Assembly (NCBI RefSeq): GCF_964204865.1
Contig: NC_135251.1
Coordinates: 16,244,001 to 16,308,000, forward strand
Source of the DNA: Styela clava
Lineage: Eukaryota
Length of the DNA stretch: 64,000 bases
Reading direction: 5' to 3'
Part shown: one piece after another, positions 2,065-10,719 of the stretch
How the letters are laid out: each line of letters starts with the position of its first letter
Position numbering within the stretch: the first letter of the stretch is position 1
Made by a program: the position numbers and the translations under genes
The notes under the pieces: model-generated
What the model saw: only the letters and a program-made list of their open reading frames with translations
The model's database searches: none
What the model was told of the DNA's origin: nothing

Positions 2065-2350
2065 CGACCCTTGACCCCAGAAAAATTCTCCCTGTAAATT
2101 TTTGATGGCCATTATGGGAGCACAAGAGTGTTTTGAAAAGTCGACGCTTACAAACTGTTTTACGTGTGGATCTATTTAAAATACATATATATATATATGA
2201 AAGGAAATTCAATAACTTGCCACTAACAGCTATCGATACCTAATTTTGGCCTAGTCTATCGCATCAACTATCTATCTACGGTAACTATCTATCTATCTTT
2301 CCATGGACTGATTTTTGAATACTGCAACTAAATTAAGGCTCCTTGGAATA
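2065..2350 (+). repeat. Interspersed repeat shared with ~10340-10635
   Basis: Both copies share cccttgaccc...attctccct...taatttt.gcctag...tgcaactaaa.taa.gctc. Confidence 0.6.
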
Positions 2351-2539
2351 CATTAGCCAGATGCGCCACATTGCCAAGTTAGTTGTCAGGTTGTACTGTA
2401 TTGGTTTTCAGATAAGGATATTATTATTGTAGTATTATCACAATTGCAACTCTATACAGCTATACAAAGGCAGAAAGGTGTGATACTATACCTGAGATAT
2501 TCATGTCTGGTATACAGGTATATTTTAGTACCACATGCA

Positions 2540-2887
2540 GATAGGATAGGATTTACATAGGCTATTTATCCAGGGGAGAGGAAAACCGATAGGAGGGCTT
2601 ATCCATATGGCGAACCACGGCCTCTCGCGCGGTTACCATTCCAAGTCGGGTACCGGTATGGGATTAGTTATATTGTTTGTTTTGGGAAGCATGGACTTGG
2701 TGGTGGAGAAAGCCGTACCCGACCAGCGGTTAGGTGAACCACCCAACGACGGCGAGGAGTCCAGCAATCCTCTCGCACATAACCATCCCTGCATGGGATT
2801 CGAACCTGCGAACCCACGCAGAGTAATTAGAGGTGCGGTGGCGAGCGTATTCCTAACGTTTAGCCTGTTAAGCCACACCGCCGCGCC
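2540..2887 (-). mobile_element. tRNA-derived SINE, full-length copy
   Basis: Closely similar reverse complement of 46691-47046, with pol III A box, B box GGTTCGAATCC and (ATCCT)n tail. Confidence 0.85.
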
Positions 2888-2888
2888 A

Positions 2889-3274
2889 CTTCTAGTTGGC
2901 CTGGCTCAACAATTTTTGCATATGTTAATCCTAACCCCCACCTGACTATGTCACCGAAATTGTGTCATTTTGGACGTCACAGTGGCGTAAAAAGACCCTC
3001 CCAAAGTATGAGGATGATCGTCCAAAACGCGCAGACGATCACTCGAAATCGAGCAAGCTAGTTCTCTCGTTTTTTCGTCACAACGATCACCATAGGAGAG
3101 AGATCGTCGGCGTTAGCAAGTTCGTTATCGGCGGCGCAGATGCCATTTCGGGCGATTGTAATTATACTTTGGCAAGCCATATCACGTGATGGTGACATAA
3201 TTTTTGGATGGCATAGTCAGGTGGGGATTAGGGATAACATATGCAAAATTCATTATGTTACACCCACTGGAAGT
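2889..3274. mobile_element. MITE with long imperfect terminal inverted repeats, just upstream of MRPS33
   Basis: Left acttctagttgg...tttgcatatgttaatcctaacccccacctgactatg mirrors right catagtcaggtggggattagggataacatatgcaaaa...ccactggaagt. Confidence 0.65.
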
Positions 3275-3348
3275 ACAAAACTATACTAGACCCAGACACT
3301 CAACCATCACTTCAATGTATTATTCTTATAATTTTCTAAGACTATAAG

Positions 3349-4180
3349 ATGAGTAGAAGTCCGTCTCAATATGCTAAGCACATGAAACATCTGAGTGCCA
3401 GAATATTTGGAGAACCTACTCAACAGCAACAATTTCAAGCACATAGAGTCATCAAGCTTATGTCCAAGCAGCCATTCTATAAAAAAACTGAGTTTGTCAA
3501 TTATTATCCGAAGATTTTTGAGACTGGAAGACTATTCATCAAACTCAGGGATTTGGGACTATATGTGTGAGTAGTAACTTTTCAAATGTAGAGATGATTT
3601 ATGATTCAGATATTTATTTTTGTCATGCAAAACCAGTATACAGATATACAATATGAAATAAATAAAAAGTACATAACAAATTAAAAAAACGTATATCGGC
3701 TTGTTGCAGTGGATTAGGGTTCGCGAAAGACTCAAAGAGTCATAGTCAAGTTTATTTTTTCCAACCAGTAATGTAATAAACAGATACAAAAATATATGCG
3801 AAAAAGTAAAGAACATAATTTTACTGGGGAAGGGAAGCCACCAGTCAACGACACTTTGTAGCTGCATTGAAGCAGCAAATATAGCAACCGAACAACTCAA
3901 TATTACACATTTACTAAATTGGACACAATCGTATAAAAAAGGGCAACAAAAAGAATACCAAATAAACTGCAAATGCCACAATGACTATGAGGTAGTATAT
4001 GTCAGCTTGTGGTCTCTAATTATTGTCAAAATTGACTATTGTTTCATAAATCATCATATATGTTTGTGTGATCTTTCTATTTTTAGAGATGAACATTTGG
4101 ACTTCAATGAAGAATACCAACGCTTGAGAGAAGCCAGAGGGAAAGTATTTGTGAGAAAAGACTGGTCAAAGAAAAATTAA
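3349..4180 (+). CDS. MRPS33: Mitochondrial ribosomal protein S33 (2 exons, ~103 aa)
   Basis: Exons 3349-3566 and 4087-4180 with a GT-AG phase-2 intron. Translation MSRSPSQYAKHMKHLSARIFGE...YYP...LRDLGLYVDEHLDFNEEYQRLREARGK matches the mS33 motifs LSARIFG and LGLYxDEHxDF. Confidence 0.93.
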
Positions 4181-4258
4181 TTTTATATAACAACACTACA
4201 TTTCATATTTGTCTCACCTGCCTCATTTGTCAACAAACTTAACATTTTAATTTAAAAA

Positions 4259-5436
4259 ATGGAGGTTGAGGATCAGAACTCTGCAAAAACACAGGAATTG
4301 TCAACCAACCCAAGTAAAAACGACAATGTTCCCTCACTTCCAAGAGACCCCACATTGGATTGCGCTATATGCTTGCAACGTTTTGTTCAACCTATTCAAC
4401 TTCCATGCAGCCACACATTTTGCTTCTTGTGTGCAAAGGTTAGAATTGACTCATATAATACAATTATCTGGTAGGGATAATTAGAGTAGTGATATCAATC
4501 AGCATGGGGAAAATTTCTCGTTTTGAGCCTTCAAAAAACTGACACAGCAAACCTTACTAGTTCTTGTATATCATCTATTCTTTTTTTTTTCTTATATATT
4601 TTTTTAAATTGACTATAAGTAGTGTGAGATATCGCCTTGTATATATCGCATTTCAAGAAAATTGTTAAACAAAGTATTACACTTACAATATTAACTTTTT
4701 TATCATTGATAGTGCACTCGAAAACTTATGCTGACATTTTTAGAAAATGGTCTCAATTCCAGTCCTTGGGCCTGTTTGTCAGAATTTCACTTTATTAAAT
4801 TCTGTAAGGCCTAGAAATATTATTTTTCATCCAAAAATGGATGAATCAAGTGAGTTTTGAATACATTCCCAGTATACCATATTATATGAATGTTAATTCT
4901 AAACATTTGTGATCTATCTAACATAATGTATATTTGATTAGGGTATTGCACTTCAACGACAGCCTTGTGCTCTCTGCAGGACTGATATTCCCGCTGATTT
5001 CTTAACCAAACCTGGACAATTTCAAGCCAAACATCGTTCGAAACCAGGGACAGAAGATATAGCCACGCATATGTGGTACTATCAAGGTCATAAAGGATGG
5101 TGGCAATATGACATCAGAACGTCTGCTGACATTGAGGATGCATATAATCGCAAAGATAAATCCATTGACATCTTAATAGCTGGAGCCATTTATGTCATAG
5201 ACTTAGAGGAAATGGTACAGTATCGACGAGATATGAACTCCAGGAAAAGAAAAATCAAAAGAGATATAGTGGATGCCCAGAAAAAGGGTGTAGCCGGTAT
5301 GACTGGGTCCACCTCATCTACAGACACATCTACAAGTGCATCAACTTTGGGTGCTAGTGACTCCCAGTTGAGACAAGGTCCAATAGGCGATGGAAATGAT
5401 CCTGTTGTTGGATCCCAAACAGGAGGGTGTAACTGA
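4259..5436 (+). CDS. RNF146: E3 ubiquitin ligase RNF146/Iduna (RING + WWE, ~224 aa)
   Basis: Exons 4259-4438 and 4942-5436, phase 0. C3HC4 RING (CAICLQ...[13 protein letters not shown]|G...CALCR) followed by a WWE domain ([13 protein letters not shown]...[13 protein letters not shown]...KRKIKRD...KKGVAG). Confidence 0.94.
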
Positions 5437-6018
5437 CTCCCAAATACACATTATTAGACTTCAAAGTGCTTAGCCTACCGAAATAGATATCTGCGCATCA
5501 AATATATTATTTCCATGTAAAAACATATGCACTTGTTCAAATCAGAATAGCTGTATTATTGAACTTGCAAATCACGGGTACAATGTGTACAGATTTATTT
5601 TTGCCTCTCATAGTTTATAGTTCACTAATTACTTGTTCAGTTAAGTTATCAATTCCTCTAACACAAAATATATTTAGACACAGTCTCCAACACAATGATG
5701 TAAATATTTAAAACCAAACAGCCCAACATTCCATAGCTAGCTGCTTCTGCAGTAAAATACATTAGATAATGGAACCGCCTGAAAACTAATTCTTCAAGCG
5801 CATCACCTGCTCTAACAAGTAGAATACTGATTTCTGTATTATAGAGAAAATGCTATATTTAATATCATCTGCTGTATTCTGATTGGCAGATGTGAATAAA
5901 TTTTCAAATGTATCCTAAGACTCGGTGGTTAGAAATAATATGCTCTTTGTTGCAGTATTGTTTAGCTTGACCAGCCACCCCCTTTTAAAATTTTCAAAGA
6001 ACGAAATAGTGTCTATAG

Positions 6019-6442
6019 CAGGGGTGGGCAACTTCTCTAGTCGGGGGGCCAGATCAGATGTGGGAAAATGAAGTCCCCGGCGGGCCAGATTATTACAAAA
6101 AATACCTATCTTTGTTAAATGCTCGACACTCTGTCAACTTCACGTTTCTTGGAATATTTCATGGTTAATAAAACTTAATATAAAATCTAATTATAAATAT
6201 ACCTGATAACAGAAGTAGGAATGTATGCGACGCGCACGCGCTCTGCTTTGAACTTATATTGTTAGTTTGAAAAGTGTGCTAACGCAATTGTTTATTTCCC
6301 CAGCTCGCACTAACAGTGCGGTGACAGTAGAGCGATCGGCAACTTTCAGGAATGATGCGTCGGACCACATTAGAGAGTGTGGTTGGATATAGTCAGCAGG
6401 CCGGTCAGAATCTCGTCGCGGGCTGTATGTTGCCCACCCCTG
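6019..6442. mobile_element. hAT-type MITE
   Basis: TIRs CAGGGGTGGGCAAC/GTTGCCCACCCCTG; perfect 8-bp TSD GTCTATAG. Confidence 0.9.
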
Positions 6443-6914
6443 GTCTATAGAATGCACTTTCACATAACCAGTTTCGTCAAAATCAGGGATTCATTTTTAT
6501 CGATATGACGCTCCCGGAATTTGCATTGCCAACATTATGATGAGTTGTACCAGGCAATGCCGCCTGTCTAGCCACTAGCTAAATAATGTAATATGATTAA
6601 TCGACATTTTTCCAACCGTGATATCTTTAAGAGGAAGTCAGTGTCGCAAGATGTGAATCAAAACCAGATATAACCAGGCAGTTTACCCAGATTAGAAGAC
6701 TTTAAAAATGGGTAGTGCAACTTCTTGCGGATGCCATTCCACGACAATTCAGATTTGAGCCCCCCCCCCCCCGTTTTGAAAACGCTGGTTGCACCGTTGC
6801 CTGACAACAACAACCATCGACAAGGAATTTAAAAATACAATTCTGGGTCGATAAGTGGTTGACTGGAGTATCCCCCCAACATTCATTCAATGAAGTAAAT
6901 TTCAAACAAGAGAT

Positions 6915-7698
6915 CTATTTGAAATGATCTAATAAAACATTTAAAAATCTTGCTGCTGAATGATGAGGATGTTTATGCTTCTGAGAATTCCATGAAAACC
7001 TGGACAACAAGTTATTCCATATCATGTTAAAGGTGTATCGCAACTCATCCATTGTCTCAGAGAGTTGAACTTCTATTGAACAACCATGTTTGAACTTTAT
7101 CATGGACATCAACATCAAGCTTTGTGCCACACAGATAGTCATGTGTGTCAAATTGTATTTGTGATAATGTCGCTTATTTTGTAATAACACCATGGCTAAG
7201 CTTGCACCTGGAGATCCTCCAGCTAAACTGAAACTAAAAAAATCAGAATGAGCATAGCGAAAATTTTTTGATAAAAACACCCAGATGGAGCCAAAGCTAG
7301 CAGGAATTCTAGTGCTTCCAGCTCCTATTCCTCTAATTATTAATTCCCATTTATATTTCATAAAAATGATAAACTTCAAGCCAAATTTGTATGAAGTATA
7401 AAATCCATAGTCACACTGCTGATGTAGTGCGCTACGAAAATAAAGCAAAAGGTTTATGAGGATATCCTATCAAAATATAAGAATGTGTTTTTAATTACCC
7501 ATGTAAAATTGGCTCCGGTATATTTGCTGGATTTTCATAAGTCAAGCTAGATATAGTAGCATCAATAGTGTGAACAAAAAAAGTAAGTCCGTTAATTGAA
7601 ACAAAATAATTGAAAGCTAAATCATCATCCAAGTCTTCCAGCAAAATTAATACAGATCTTGCAACACTCCAACCAAACAGCAAACATAATTTGTCCAT
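6915..7698 (-). CDS. DUF1294-like (YsdA-like) small membrane protein, 2 exons, ~172 aa
   Basis: Exon 7698-7499 (donor GG|GTAATT) spliced in phase 2 to exon 7233-6915 (acceptor TTTTTAG) joins two ORF-track fragments. The junction reads INGLTFFVHTID...NIPEPILHGFSLAGGSPGASLAMVLL, resembling from memory the DUF1294 pattern TFxxYGxDK...IPExxLHxxxxxGGxPGAxLAM. Confidence 0.6.
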
Positions 7699-7722
7699 GG
7701 TATGACAGTTTATATCCCGAAC

Positions 7723-8234
7723 TTATTTGACAGCAGGTGCTGGAAGAGATTCAAAAGTCAGGTCTTCAAATGATCCTGTCAATAAAACGCCTGCGCCAAA
7801 AAGTGCGATGTTGATAAGGAATTTCCTGCAATATCAAAACAAAGTAGTTTTTCAATATAAGATCTTATTAACTTTCAAATTAACGAATGCATCTATGTTG
7901 ACTCATTTTTCATTAAAAGAATTTTATGTTTATAGAATTTTCTTGCAAGATGGTCCAAAGTAGCGCTATAATCAAATTTCGCAGCTATGTTGAAGATTTT
8001 TTTGGGTGACCCATCAGCCTTTTCCATGAACAAGGACACTAAAATGTAAGAAACTATGATAGTTTGGAAGGACTGTAATCTACCTACTTGGTTCGGCATT
8101 GCCTACCGAATTTATTACAACCTGGCAGAGATAGAAAATTCACACAAACACATAGCTTACCTCTTCGATGAATTTGTAAACCACTCTTTCACAATGTTCA
8201 TGTATGATTTCTTTGATTTATCTGTAGGAGTCAT
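7723..8234 (-). CDS. TOM6-like mitochondrial outer membrane translocase microprotein (58 aa)
   Basis: Exons 8234-8161 (donor AG|GTAAGC) and 7825-7723 (acceptor TTGCAG) give MTPTDKSKKSYMNIVKEWFTNSSKRKFLINIALFGAGVLLTGSFEDLTFESLPAPAVK. RKFLINIALFGAGVLL resembles vertebrate TOMM6 RRNLILNLGLFAAGVWL (single tail-anchor TM). Confidence 0.6.
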
Positions 8235-8970
8235 TTTCAAGAACTGAGCATTAAGCTAGACTCAATCTAATAATGTTAGTCACTATATAAATCAAAAACA
8301 TCGAATATCGATAATGAAACACAGGCACAATTGATAATATGAAAAGGACAAAATTTATAAAAATATGCAGCATCAACCGGATTCTTCAATTCAGATTGAT
8401 TTCTTACCAACAATTGTACAGTTTGTTATATTGTTAATAGTAAATCCACGTCTCACAGTCACACACACCAAAGGTATGTTGATAAGGTTATTGTAGTACT
8501 ACCGGTACATCTGAGTGGCTTTTACAGAGTTTCAGAAATACCAGGGATGGCCATATTCTAAAATTAACAATTAAAAAAAATATGGCAAATATACATTTGC
8601 AGACTGAAATTTTAATAAGAGCAAAAAGCAATGAATGTGTTTTCTACTTCTATCAGGATAAATTCAATGTAAAATCTGGTATAGTTAAATAGATGGATGC
8701 AAAGTCTTTCTGGACTCATCGATAGAGTTCATGCATCCATACATTGGCTGAGTAGGTTTTCCTCCAACATCCAAGGAAAGATTGATTGGTTGACCCCTGA
8801 CTGACATGGTGACTGGACAAGATAGAGAGAGTTCCTCCCATATGATTAATCACGAAAAATCCTAAATTTTAAATAGTTTTGGCTGGTCGTATTTTCAAAC
8901 TTTTCACAGTCAACAATAAATTCAGGAAATTAAGTCAAATTTATGAACCACAGCAGGCAGCAAAATAATA

Positions 8971-9522
8971 TCAGCTCTCCCCAGAGCGTGATTTTTTACC
9001 ATATTTGTCGACCTTGTTCTGCCGAATCTTACGCTTTTTATCTTTGCTTGCAGATGCAGAGTCTTGGGTACTGACAGAACTATATCCATCTTCCGAGTTA
9101 TTTTTATTTTTAACACTCGATGTGGAAATTTTGCCATTTGAATCTGAACGTTTTAACAGTTTGTTTCCTCCATTTTCTCTAGATTGTTTTTCTTTGCTTG
9201 AACTAGAGTCTCCATCTTTTCGAGAATCCACTCCACTTACAGCCGCCGCAGATGTGATTGAAGATTTACTAAAAAGTCTTTCAGCTTCTTTAAATTTTCT
9301 GTTTCTACGATCTGATTTGCTATTAGTGTTTTTATTATTTGTCAAATATCTGTCCCATCCTCTAATGATGTTTCCATAGAGTTGAGTATCTTCCAAATAG
9401 CTTCCTTCAAAAGCGTAAATTTGGCGCTCAAGATTTGCTAAAGTTTCAGTTATTTCTTCTTTTCGCTTTACTAACTCTGATAGTTCTGCTCTGGTGTTGG
9501 ATCCTTGGTTTTTATTAGACAT
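8971..9522 (-). CDS. MEAF6: Chromatin modification protein MEAF6/Eaf6 (NuA4/HBO1/MOZ subunit), intronless, ~183 aa
   Basis: [12 protein letters not shown]...[33 protein letters not shown]...[17 protein letters not shown] is the Eaf6 signature. Likely ATG at 9522, just after a TTTCAG acceptor. Confidence 0.96.
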
Positions 9523-10719
9523 ATTGAAAACTGAAACAGAAGACATATGACTGTATGACATATTAACTACCATATGAAAATCTTGTTCTTTGGTTTGCAG
9601 GTTTAACCCAAGCTAAAATGAAAATCATTCAGAAATGAAATATCAAATAATTAAAAGTGCAAATGATTAGCCTGCTCCAAATTTTCAGATTTTTGAATCA
9701 ATTATTGAATTAGAAAGACTAAGCACCTAGATTTAGGTTATATTGAAGCAAAAGCTATAATGGCCAAAGAAAATTGGGTGTTATATTGGTATGGGATTTC
9801 AACATATATTATACAGCAAATATTGTTATTTGCTCATGCTTATTGTATTATGTACTTGTATCGGAAATAAATCATTATCTATCTATCAACATTTATGTGA
9901 TCTCAGTGCAGCAGTGATTCTAGTTAGGGTTAAGAGCTGAAATATATGAGAATGTCTGAATGAAGCACCACTTTGGTATACAATTGAGATCACACTGAAC
10001 AAGTGAGGTCGCATACCAAAGTGGCAACCCATTATGCATTATGATTTTTTATAACTTTGTCATATATGTGCCTATGTTTGCCCATTTTGATATCATTCGT
10101 ATTTAAACTATTACTTCGCCAAAAATAAATTACACTTTTATAATACCTAAATACTCATGGACTAAATATATGCGATACACTATTATTCAATGATAGACCT
10201 AAAAAAAAACAGAATTATTGCCCTATATTCTGATACCGTATTATATTTCAAGTAATGAATAAAATTGGTAGGTTGGGTTGAGTCGAGTCAAACTGAAAAT
10301 ACATAGACTATCATAAGCTTCTACGATTGAGGTTTTCCCCTACCCTTGACCCAGTGGCCCCAAAAATATTCTCCCTAATTTTTTGACGCTGAATTGGATT
10401 TTTTTTGAAGAGTTTGCACTTATAAATAAACTTGTTATACTGTTAGACTGGCCTATATGTTCAAAAGCATTATTTTTGTTAAAAACAATTAACCACGTGC
10501 CGCTCACAGATACCGGTATCTAATTTTAGCCTAGCCCTGTCAGCCTGTACGTACCGGTGCCGGTACGGTAGACCATCGCAGCTTTTTCGAGACTAATTTT
10601 TGATTATTGCAACTAAACTAAAGCTCTGTGGAAAGCATAACGACTTTTATACGGTACTATTTGATTTACAACTAATTTTTGGAAACACAACTGAAAACTA
10701 ATACGCAAAATCACAAAAA

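What the first reader, a model, noticed from the sequence alone, without database searches (positions are those of the whole stretch)
6915..8234. Hidden TOM6-like microprotein and DUF1294-like gene separated by 24 nt, apparently sharing an exon
Seen: two spliced ORFs that the ORF track misses or fragments. The TOM6-like stop is at 7725-7723 and the next ATG (ACCATGG, strong context) is at 7698, leaving no room for a 3'UTR/polyA site or promoter. From the TOM6 exon-2 acceptor (7826) to 7698 there is no other ATG. Inference: the acceptor is dual-use. Cis-splicing gives a bicistronic mRNA translating TOM6, while trans-splicing or exon-1 skipping turns the same exon into the 5'UTR of the DUF1294-like gene, an either/or switch between two small membrane proteins.
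Basis: partly seen in the sequence, partly recalled or inferred. Interest (0 to 1): 0.75.

Follow-up and report, generated by a model that had tools for sequence, protein, structure and literature searches.

The report
Sea-squirt TOM6 and DUF1294-like two-gene transcript
In the sea squirt Styela clava, the tiny mitochondrial import protein TOM6 and an unrelated small membrane protein are encoded 24 bases apart on one spliced RNA; this looks like an ordinary tunicate two-gene unit, and how the second protein gets translated is still open.

Summary
On the minus strand a two-exon 58-aa ORF (8234-7723) and a two-exon 172-aa ORF (7698-6915) lie 24 nt apart. Both introns are spliced out in 3 of 3 RNA-like runs from three studies and in 0 of 1 DNA-like run. 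Both proteins already exist in RefSeq as "isoforms" X2 and X1 of one uncharacterized Styela clava gene, LOC120336316.

The small ORF is a probable TOM6. Its only Pfam hits are the two Tom6 families, below threshold. A 3-sequence profile hits human TOMM6 first in the PDB (E 0.0095). It has one C-terminal membrane segment and is single copy. The larger ORF is DUF1294-like (23.7 bits, cut-off 25).

In each RNA run one contig runs unbroken from TOM6 exon 1 through the spacer into the downstream ORF. The spacer's only AG is lost (G>C) in all three RNA runs.

Best reading (0.5): one transcription unit whose spliced bicistronic RNA is the TOM6 mRNA and also carries the second ORF.

The scan noted similar tight pairs elsewhere in this genome. 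This is a new member of a known kind, of moderate interest.

The parts
8235..8272 (-). 5' leader of the unit, up to a possible RNA 5' end at about 8272. It holds a 4-codon uORF with its ATG at 8251.
   Evidence: The X6 contig ends at 8272 and runs straight into adapter-like letters. X6 has no cover for 8273-8300. The adapter start is as printed in PMC7986045. ATG list. Weak evidence: X1 and X2 contigs run on upstream.
8161..8234 (-). TOM6-like exon 1, coding part (24 codons plus 2 nt).
   Evidence: Joint seen in X1, X2 and X6. P0005 aligns across the junction.
7826..8160 (-). TOM6-like intron, 335 nt, GT..AG.
   Evidence: Skipped in 3 of 3 RNA-like runs and present in the DNA-like run X11.
7723..7825 (-). 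TOM6-like exon 2 coding part: membrane helix plus C-terminal tail, with the stop TAA at 7725-7723.
   Evidence: Pfam Tom6 families are the only hits. Profile A2 hits human TOMM6 first in the PDB.
7740..7741 (-). Best acceptor-like AG inside the TOM6 coding exon. It is a candidate trans-splice site and its use is untested.
   Evidence: 80% pyrimidines in positions -15 to -1 and a CTGAC branch-like motif upstream. No RNA evidence for or against.
7699..7722 (-). 24-nt spacer, in frame with both ORFs (VRDINCHT, no stop). Its only AG is formed with the last A of the stop codon, and G7722 is C in the RNA runs.
   Evidence: The change at 7722 is seen in X1, X2 and X6 but not X11.
7499..7698 (-). DUF1294-like exon 1, with ATG at 7698 in ACCATGG.
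   Evidence: Identical to P0001 residues 1-66. The N-terminus is conserved in P0002.
7234..7498 (-). DUF1294-like intron, 265 nt, GT..AG, retained in a minority of RNA. Retention ends the ORF at TAA 7497-7495. ATTAAA sits at 7495.
   Evidence: Joint depths are 325.9, 144.5 and 63.4, against intron-bearing contigs at 51.8, 32.5 and 10.1 in X1, X2 and X6. ORF list; hexamer list.
6915..7233 (-). DUF1294-like exon 2 coding part, including the stop.
   Evidence: Two of 2 listed changes here are synonymous.
6391..6914 (-). 3' untranslated region, as far as an RNA contig reaches. No AATAAA is present.
   Evidence: X1 record 4 covers 6391-7234. Hexamer list.

Best explanation
This is one transcription unit of Styela clava (RefSeq gene LOC120336316) that yields a fully spliced RNA carrying two unrelated, conserved ORFs.

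The first ORF is the animal's only recognisable TOM6. TOM6 is a small tail-anchored subunit of the mitochondrial outer-membrane import pore. This ORF is read by ordinary cap-dependent scanning. Because only 24 nt follow its stop codon, the TOM6 mRNA has no 3' end of its own, and the whole downstream gene serves as its 3' UTR.

The second ORF encodes a 172-aa, DUF1294-like small membrane protein. I take it to be translated from the same RNA by ribosomes that skip the TOM6 start (leaky scanning) or resume after the short 58-codon ORF (reinitiation). Only three AUGs precede it, and its own AUG has the optimal ACCATGG context. Retention of the second intron, in roughly 14-18% of RNA by contig depth, gives RNAs that can make TOM6 only.

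Shown: the gene models, the splicing, both ORFs on one contig path, conservation of both proteins, and loss of the spacer AG in three RNA data sets.
Inferred: that single molecules carry both ORFs, and the route of downstream translation.
For: - Both joints appear in 3 of 3 RNA-like runs. In each run one contig covers TOM6 exon 1, exon 2, the spacer and DUF exon 1 without a break: X1 record 6, X2 record 21 and X6 record 26. The same contigs do break at 7499, where a long alternative path (the retained intron) exists.
- RefSeq models both proteins inside one gene.
- The spacer has a single AG (TAA|G). The G is C in X1, X2 and X6, so no acceptor can sit between the ORFs in those animals.
- No AATAAA lies on this strand between 8971 and 6300 except in the TOM6 intron.
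- Only ATGs at 8251, 8234 and 8201 precede 7698, and the downstream start is ACCATGG.
- Both proteins are conserved. P0002 is 72% identical over 172 aa with the same start. P0005 and P0004 are 54% and 50% identical to the 58-aa protein in alignment A2.
- Three of 3 listed coding changes are synonymous.
- Both genes are single copy.
- A second pair in the window, MRPS33 then RNF146, is likewise joined on one spliced contig.
Against: - Contigs are not molecules. The tool states that a contig across two genes shows no single transcript and that contigs drop rare variants and cannot show starts or ends. A few unresolved precursor reads could bridge two separate mRNAs, and a short leader or poly(A) branch would be lost.
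- Tunicates resolve tight same-strand pairs by spliced-leader trans-splicing as a rule (PMC1488885, PMC2760879).
- The TOM6 AUG has A at -3, which does not favour leaky scanning. 24 nt is short for reinitiation after 58 codons (established knowledge, recalled).
- The lack of ATGs is not beyond chance (8.2%).
- The MRPS33 ORF ahead of RNF146 holds several ATGs (read by eye). Leaky scanning therefore cannot be the general rule for such pairs.
Confidence: 0.5

Rival explanations
1. Either/or processing by spliced-leader trans-splicing. Each primary transcript has one of two fates. It stays whole, giving the bicistronic RNA that makes TOM6. Or it is trans-spliced at an AG in or at TOM6 exon 2, giving a monocistronic DUF1294-like mRNA and destroying the TOM6 message. 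Three sites are candidates: most likely 7741/7740; the reader's 7827/7826; or, in the reference allele only, the TAA|G boundary in the Ciona manner, with poly(A) added at that G.
For: - Styela is an ascidian. In Ciona about a fifth of genes sit in operons whose genes abut directly, with poly(A) added at the G of the acceptor AG (PMC1488885 section 14; PMC2760879).
- The AG at 7741 has the best acceptor context in the exon: 80% pyrimidines and CTGAC upstream.
- The reference allele has an AG exactly at the stop codon.
- Generic annotation pipelines are known to fuse operon genes into one gene (PMC2760879 passage), as RefSeq does here.
- For the neighbouring MRPS33-RNF146 pair, leaky scanning looks impossible.
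Against: - No leader-like loose end and no contig break appear at 7825, 7741 or 7722 in 3 RNA runs. This is weak, because contigs lose short tips and 9 loose ends were not shown.
- The AG at the stop codon is absent from the allele seen in all 3 RNA runs.
- An acceptor inside the coding exon would leave the upstream RNA without a stop codon.
- The pyrimidine tract and CTGAC lie in codons for the conserved DLTFE motif, so they may be by-products of coding.
Confidence: 0.3
2. The DUF1294-like gene has its own transcription start inside TOM6 exon 2 or the spacer. The two genes then overlap but are separate mRNAs, and the joined contig comes from read-through.
For: Contigs cannot show starts. A TATAAA lies at 7714 in the spacer.
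Against: - That TATAAA is only 16 nt before the ATG, so a start about 30 nt downstream would fall after it.
- TOM6 would still lack a 3' end of its own.
- No contig break or depth step can be seen.
Confidence: 0.07
3. Stop-codon read-through fusion. The two ORFs are in the same frame, separated by one TAA and eight sense codons. Read-through would therefore give a TOM6-DUF1294-like fusion protein.
For: The spacer translates as VRDINCHT with no further stop. In the RNA-run allele the base after TAA is C. That is the weakest termination context known (recalled).
Against: - Being in frame with no stop over 8 codons is expected in roughly a quarter of cases by chance (my estimate).
- UAA is the least leaky stop (recalled).
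- Homologues P0004 and P0005 end as short proteins.
- P0002 starts at the same Met.
- A tail-anchored protein would lose its free C-terminus.
Confidence: 0.03
4. MEAF6-TOM6-DUF1294-like is a three-gene operon. The intronless MEAF6/Eaf6-like gene (9573-8971) would be the first cistron.
For: RNA contigs cover the whole 736-nt interval. X1 covers 8906 to 8160 joined to TOM6, and X6 covers 9643 to 8301 joined to MEAF6. Single-exon genes are enriched in Ciona operons (PMC2760879).
Against: In X6 the MEAF6 contig stops at 8301, and the TOM6 contig starts at 8272 next to adapter letters, with no cover between them. That fits two units with a long MEAF6 3' UTR.
Confidence: 0.15

Closest known systems
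Ciona-type spliced-leader-resolved operons (Satou et al. 2006, PMC1488885; 2008, PMC2760879)
   Same: Same-strand ascidian gene pair less than 100 nt apart. The functions are unrelated and the upstream gene is small. Generic pipelines fuse such pairs into one gene.
   Different: In Ciona the upstream poly(A) site abuts the downstream acceptor AG, and the downstream mRNA carries the leader. Here only 24 nt separate the two coding regions. The one AG is polymorphic and absent from the expressed alleles seen. No leader could be looked for.
Animal bicistronic mRNAs with an upstream microprotein ORF. An earlier scan note (s1-807952) gives the SMIM4-BRAWNIN pair as a published example; I did not check that.
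   Same: A small mitochondrial membrane protein is encoded ahead of a second conserved ORF on one spliced RNA, with a very short spacer.
   Different: I found no report of TOM6 in this role. The partner is a lineage-restricted DUF1294-like protein. Translation of the second ORF is untested.
Human TOMM6 in the TOM core complex (PDB 7ck6 chain E and 13 further entries)
   Same: Similar size class, one membrane helix near the C-terminus, and a Pro-rich tail. A profile match covers residues 39-72 of 74.
   Different: Similarity is weak (E 0.0095; Pfam 15.4 bits against a cut-off of 27). The N-terminal half is shorter and unrelated in sequence.
DUF1294 (PF06961), e.g. Bacillus subtilis in the tool's control set
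   Same: The motif region IPE..L..LAGG.PGA...M....K.H matches profile positions 21-50. The protein is small and hydrophobic.
   Different: The score is below the family cut-off and the first 20 profile positions do not match. The protein has a roughly 60-residue N-terminal and a roughly 80-residue C-terminal extension, and the gene has an intron and sits in an animal genome.

Membership tests
TOM6 / TOMM6 (Pfam PF15184 TOM6p; fungal PF17112 Tom6) | Score over the family's curated cut-off (27 bits for PF15184) | tested here: not met
   P0003 scores 15.4 bits (E 0.016), P0004 16.3 bits (E 0.0087) and P0005 20.9 bits (E 3.1e-4). Exon 2 alone gives E 0.14 and E 0.066 for the two Tom6 families. The Tom6 families are the only hits for P0003 and P0005. 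TOM6p is the best of three hits for P0004.
TOM6 / TOMM6 | Sequence relation to an experimentally placed TOM6 subunit | tested here: met
   Profile A2 (3 sequences) against 177,635 PDB sequences gave 3 hits at E<=10. The first is human TOMM6 (7ck6_E, E 0.0095, residues 39-72 of 74). The second is a TOM fusion construct holding the same segment. The third is unrelated (E 1.6). The 33-aa piece alone found no TOM6. The relation is weak but specific.
TOM6 / TOMM6 | Protein of about 55-80 aa with one membrane segment close to the C-terminus | tested here: met
   58 aa, with a single hydrophobic stretch at residues 27-45 and a 13-residue tail. P0004 and P0005 show the same pattern.
TOM6 / TOMM6 | Part of the TOM40 complex in the mitochondrial outer membrane | not testable with these tools
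DUF1294 (PF06961) | Score over the curated cut-off (25 bits) across the 55-position domain | tested here: not met
   P0001 scores 23.7 bits (E 6.1e-5), over profile positions 21-50 only. P0002 scores 19.7 bits (E 0.001). It is the only hit for P0001. The genome-wide scan finds only this locus, at 18.8 bits.
Ciona-type SL-resolved operon | Same-strand neighbours less than 100 nt apart | tested here: met
   24 nt lie between the stop and the next start.
Ciona-type SL-resolved operon | An acceptor AG between the cistrons that abuts the upstream poly(A) site | tested here: inconclusive
   There is one AG (TAA|G) in the reference and in X11. The G is C in X1, X2 and X6. Poly(A) sites cannot be seen in contigs.
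Ciona-type SL-resolved operon | Downstream mRNA carries the spliced leader, and separate monocistronic mRNAs exist | not testable with these tools
   All four runs laid were contigs, and read laying is capped at one call. The Styela leader sequence was not established.
True bicistronic mRNA | Both ORFs on one mature spliced RNA | tested here: inconclusive
   There is one unbroken contig path in 3 of 3 RNA runs, with the TOM6 intron removed. Contigs do not prove single molecules.
True bicistronic mRNA | Both ORFs conserved as proteins | tested here: met
   P0002 is 72% identical over 172 aa. P0005 and P0004 are 54% and 50% identical to the 58-aa protein in alignment A2. Three of 3 listed coding changes are synonymous.
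True bicistronic mRNA | Both proteins made from the same mRNA | not testable with these tools
   Needs ribosome profiling or reporter assays.

The most novel reading that the evidence does not exclude
Styela clava has a class of very tight same-strand pairs whose spacers hold no usable AG. This window has two: TOM6 then DUF1294-like, and MRPS33 then RNF146. These would be former operons that lost leader-based resolution. Their downstream proteins would now be made from mature polycistronic mRNAs by a dedicated termination-reinitiation or internal-entry mechanism. At this locus the natural G/C difference right after the TOM6 stop codon would toggle between the two modes.
Probability: 0.12. Interest if true: 0.75.

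Novelty: new member of a known kind. Interest (0 to 1): 0.4.

Why it matters
- Annotation. The only recognisable TOM6 of Styela clava is filed as "uncharacterized protein isoform X2" of a gene whose "isoform X1" is a different protein. Any one-protein-per-gene or longest-isoform data set would drop it and could report TOM6 as lost.
- Mechanism. The pair has a 24-nt spacer, a polymorphic single AG and a spliced joint RNA. That makes it a compact natural test of how ascidian tight pairs are expressed: leader trans-splicing, either/or processing, or true bicistronic translation.
- Evolution. A DUF1294-like gene belongs to a family mostly known from bacteria. Here it rides behind a housekeeping mitochondrial gene, which shows how a lineage-restricted gene can borrow a promoter.

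Tried and rejected
- A PDB search with the 33-aa exon-2 peptide alone gave 2 hits, both unrelated (E 1.4 and 1.5) and no TOM6. Only the 3-sequence profile reached TOMM6.
- An Rfam search of the whole window gave 0 matches.
- NCBIfam gave nothing useful.
- A Pfam TOM6p scan of the own genome gave 0 matches. The 14 control genomes also gave 0, so this says nothing.
- The search for the leader failed. The 16-nt Ciona leader had 0 matches with up to 2 mismatches in the window. With GT added it had 160 matches in the genome against 63 for the control. The excess is one array on C3, which turned out to be a motif about 40 nt upstream of tandem tRNA genes with no leader-gene features. I therefore do not know the Styela leader and rejected that array as leader genes.
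- Linkage in other species could not be tested.
  - Two metagenome scans (P0005, then A2) and one genome-contig scan (A3) confirmed nothing.
- The word search for DUF1294-like relatives found only the protein itself and P0002: 2 of 2 candidates with exon 2 as query, and 2 of 245 with the A3 alignment. The length window and word index limit this.
- Statistics. The ATG-free 127 nt (8.2%) and the AG-free 24 nt (30%) are not beyond chance. I dropped them as arguments.
- I considered and set aside a TATA-driven internal start. The TATAAA at 7714 is too close to the ATG.
- Literature searches:
  - 'TOMM6' + 'bicistronic': 1 paper, unrelated by title, not read.
  - 'spliced leader' + 'Styela': 0 papers.
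  - 'Styela clava' + 'trans-splicing': 3 papers, 2 listed, not read.
  - 'bicistronic' + 'microprotein' + 'Ciona' + 'mitochondrial': 0 papers.
  - The four-term ascidian search listed nothing used.
- Papers read:
  - PMC1488885: passages, and section 14 in full.
  - PMC2760879 and PMC7986045: passages.
  - PMC7642931: one table passage (DUF1294 counts in cnidarians).
- Supplementary operon lists of the Ciona papers were not open. They could show whether a TOM6 pair is already listed.
Full report
**What is there**

On the minus strand of the window lie three genes in a row.
- An intronless MEAF6/Eaf6-like gene at 9573-8971 (Pfam NuA4, E 1.5e-27).
- A two-exon 58-codon ORF. Its ATG is at 8234. 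Exon 1 runs to 8161, the intron is 8160-7826, and exon 2 is 7825-7723 with the TAA at 7725-7723.
- After 24 nt, a two-exon 172-codon ORF. Its ATG is at 7698 in ACCATGG. Exon 1 runs to 7499, the intron is 7498-7234, and exon 2 is 7233-6915.

No ATG lies between 7825 and 7699, but 8.2% of random 127-nt windows here also lack one. 30% of random 24-nt windows lack AG. These two features are real but not beyond chance.

**Organism and annotation**

A word search with exon 2 of the larger ORF returned a 100% identical 172-aa RefSeq protein of Styela clava (P0001) and one 72% identical 172-aa protein from a Logan contig (P0002). These were 2 of 2 candidates.

An exhaustive search with the 33-aa exon-2 peptide of the small ORF returned a 58-aa protein identical to the spliced model (P0003) and a 78-aa relative (P0004). 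These were the 2 hits at E<=0.001.

The cluster look-up names P0003 as XP_039259909.2, "uncharacterized protein LOC120336316 isoform X2". It names P0001 as XP_077976671.1, "isoform X1" of the same gene. RefSeq therefore already holds both ORFs, inside one gene, and neither is named.

All full-length work used these stored proteins by id.

**RNA evidence**

I laid four runs on 4050-9800. X1, X2 and X6 are RNA-like and come from three studies. X11 is DNA-like.
- Both joints are present in 3 of 3 RNA-like runs. They are absent from X11, whose contig covers 6794-8623 without a gap.
- In each RNA run one contig covers TOM6 exon 1, the joint, exon 2, the spacer and the first exon of the downstream gene without a break.
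  - X1 record 6: 7499-7824 plus 8160-8906.
  - X2 record 21: 7499-7824 plus 8160-8450.
  - X6 record 26: 7499-7824 plus 8160-8272.
- These contigs end at 7499, where the graph forks between the spliced and intron-retaining forms.
  - Spliced form depths: 325.9, 144.5 and 63.4.
  - Intron-retaining form depths: 51.8, 32.5 and 10.1, or about 14-18% of the total.
  - Contig depths are only rough figures.
- Retention ends the downstream ORF at TAA 7497-7495.
- The TOM6 intron is almost never retained. Bin 7890-8081 has depth 0, 0 and 1.5.
- No other joint enters exon 2.
- Among the loose ends shown, none lies near 7825, 7741 or 7722. Nine were not shown.

Limits: all four runs were contigs. The tool states that contigs cannot show starts, ends or rare forms, and that a contig across two genes shows no single transcript. 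A short leader or poly(A) branch would not survive assembly (my recollection of how such contigs are simplified). So the RNA data prove the splicing and the existence of a joined path. They do not prove that single mature molecules carry both ORFs, and they do not exclude a spliced leader.

**The spacer**

- Its only AG is made of the last A of the stop codon and G7722.
- That G is C in X1, X2 and X6, and G only in the reference and X11. In the animals behind all three RNA data sets no acceptor can lie between the two ORFs.
- The spacer is in frame with both ORFs and has no stop (VRDINCHT).
- No AATAAA occurs on this strand from 8971 to 6300 except inside the TOM6 intron at 8116. ATTAAA sits at 7495, at the start of the second intron.
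- Inside exon 2 the AG at 7741/7740 has the best acceptor look: 80% pyrimidines and CTGAC upstream. That stretch also encodes the conserved DLTFE motif.

**Identity of the small ORF**

- Pfam finds only the two Tom6 families, all below the cut-off of 27 bits.
  - P0003: E 0.016, 15.4 bits.
  - P0004: E 0.0087.
  - P0005: E 3.1e-4, 20.9 bits. P0005 is a 66-aa homologue found with the alignment (3 of 119 candidates).
- P0005 aligns across the exon junction, which confirms the splice at the protein level.
- The single peptide does not find TOM6 in the PDB. The 3-sequence profile does: human TOMM6 of the TOM complex is the top hit (E 0.0095, residues 39-72 of 74).
- The protein has one hydrophobic segment, at 27-45 of 58.
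- The genome holds no second copy. There were 4 matches: two are the exons of this locus, and the other two have E 1.49 and 5.7.
- I take it as a probable TOM6, with weak but specific support.

**Identity of the larger ORF**

- P0001 scores 23.7 bits on DUF1294 (E 6.1e-5, cut-off 25) over profile positions 21-50 of 55. P0002 scores 19.7 bits.
- The spliced protein scores better than the unspliced reading frame (18.1 bits) or exon 2 alone (11.2 bits). This fits the splice.
- It is single copy.
- Word searches find no further relatives. No exhaustive search was run on it.
- The name "DUF1294-like" is fair. Membership is not shown.
- A table in PMC7642931 counts DUF1294 domains in several medusozoan cnidarians, so the family is not foreign to animals.

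**Selection**

Of the 10 listed differences I classified (6905-8341), 3 fall in coding sequence and all 3 are synonymous. Thirty further differences were not shown.

**How it most likely works**

In Ciona about a fifth of genes lie in operons whose genes abut without any spacer. Poly(A) of the upstream mRNA is added at the G of the acceptor AG, and the leader is joined just after it (PMC1488885 section 14; PMC2760879 passages). The latter paper also notes that generic pipelines fuse such genes, as RefSeq did here.

This pair fits the operon picture in layout. It does not fit in detail. With 24 nt between the coding regions and no AG in the expressed alleles, TOM6 cannot have a 3' end of its own, and the downstream gene cannot get a leader within the spacer.

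I therefore favour (0.5) one unit whose spliced bicistronic RNA is the TOM6 mRNA. The second ORF would be read by leaky scanning or reinitiation. Only three AUGs (8251, 8234, 8201) precede an optimal ACCATGG.

The main rival (0.3) is either/or processing. A share of transcripts would be trans-spliced at an AG in or at exon 2, most plausibly 7741/7740. That would give a monocistronic downstream mRNA at the cost of TOM6. His specific dual-use of the 7826 acceptor has no support here, and I rate it under 0.1.

Minor rivals are an internal start site (0.07) and a read-through fusion (0.03). Whether MEAF6 is a first cistron is open (0.15). Contigs bridge the 736-nt gap in X1. In X6 the MEAF6 contig stops at 8301, and the TOM6 contig starts at 8272 directly beside adapter letters. 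The adapter start is as printed in PMC7986045. This hints at a separate start.

**Context**

In the same window MRPS33 (its exon ends at 3566 and is spliced to 4087) and RNF146 (ATG 4259) are also joined on one spliced contig (X6 record 23). Read by eye, their 78-nt spacer has no AG. MRPS33 holds several ATGs, so leaky scanning cannot explain that pair.

Earlier notes of this scan list more tight pairs in this genome: BRK1-C1orf52, VMA21-SNX25, SMIM4-BRAWNIN and LYRM7-CINP. They also list leader-gene arrays. These are unchecked leads, but they show the scan has met this kind before.

**What could not be done**

- Scans for related loci were blank. Linkage in other species and the fold of either protein are therefore untested.
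- The Styela leader sequence was not established. The only enriched near-match to the Ciona leader is a motif upstream of tandem tRNA genes.
- Supplementary operon tables of the Ciona papers were not open.

**Verdict**

This is a new member of a known kind: an ascidian tight gene pair or bicistronic unit. It has a useful annotation consequence, because Styela's TOM6 is hidden as an "isoform". It also has an unresolved and testable question about how the second ORF is expressed. Interest 0.4.

Noticed in passing
window 3349-5436 (+): MRPS33 (exon to 3566, spliced to 4087, stop about 4178-4180) and RNF146 (ATG 4259) lie on one spliced RNA contig (X6 record 23). The 78-nt spacer shows no AG by eye. 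MRPS33 holds several ATGs, so leaky scanning cannot serve RNF146.
   Followed up: partly
window 8971-9573 (-): Intronless MEAF6/Eaf6-like gene (Pfam NuA4, E 1.5e-27). Its RNA cover runs on for about 670 nt or more after the stop, up to the TOM6 leader. A T-rich AG acceptor-like site lies at 9614-9613, just before its ATG, and the RNA contigs end at 9606-9643.
   Followed up: partly
window 5970-6545: Repeat between the two convergent gene groups. Depth in the DNA-like run X11 is about 2,300-3,400, against about 12-18 elsewhere. Many loose ends and odd joints occur here in all runs.
   Followed up: no
window 8933: Insertion/deletion difference between animals. X6 carries 29 extra letters with a T-run here, and the X1 contig breaks at the same place. 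The locus is highly polymorphic overall: most contigs are 95-99% alike.
   Followed up: no
window 7495-7500 (-): ATTAAA sits at the very start of the retained intron, right at the stop that ends the ORF when the intron is kept. It could end a short TOM6-only RNA, possibly the transcript behind RefSeq 'isoform X2'.
   Followed up: no
L011 (G000:C3:24860000-24864000) and the array C3:24.85-24.96 Mb: Large tandem array of tRNA genes, with about 90 or more copies of one 18-letter motif. The motif lies about 40 nt upstream of a long-arm tRNA gene and contains an octamer-like ATTTGCAT. It resembles the Ciona leader by chance.
   Followed up: partly
window 8237-8251 (-): A four-codon uORF (ATG at 8251, TGA at 8239-8237) ends 2 nt before the TOM6 ATG, if the RNA starts at or above 8272.
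   Followed up: no
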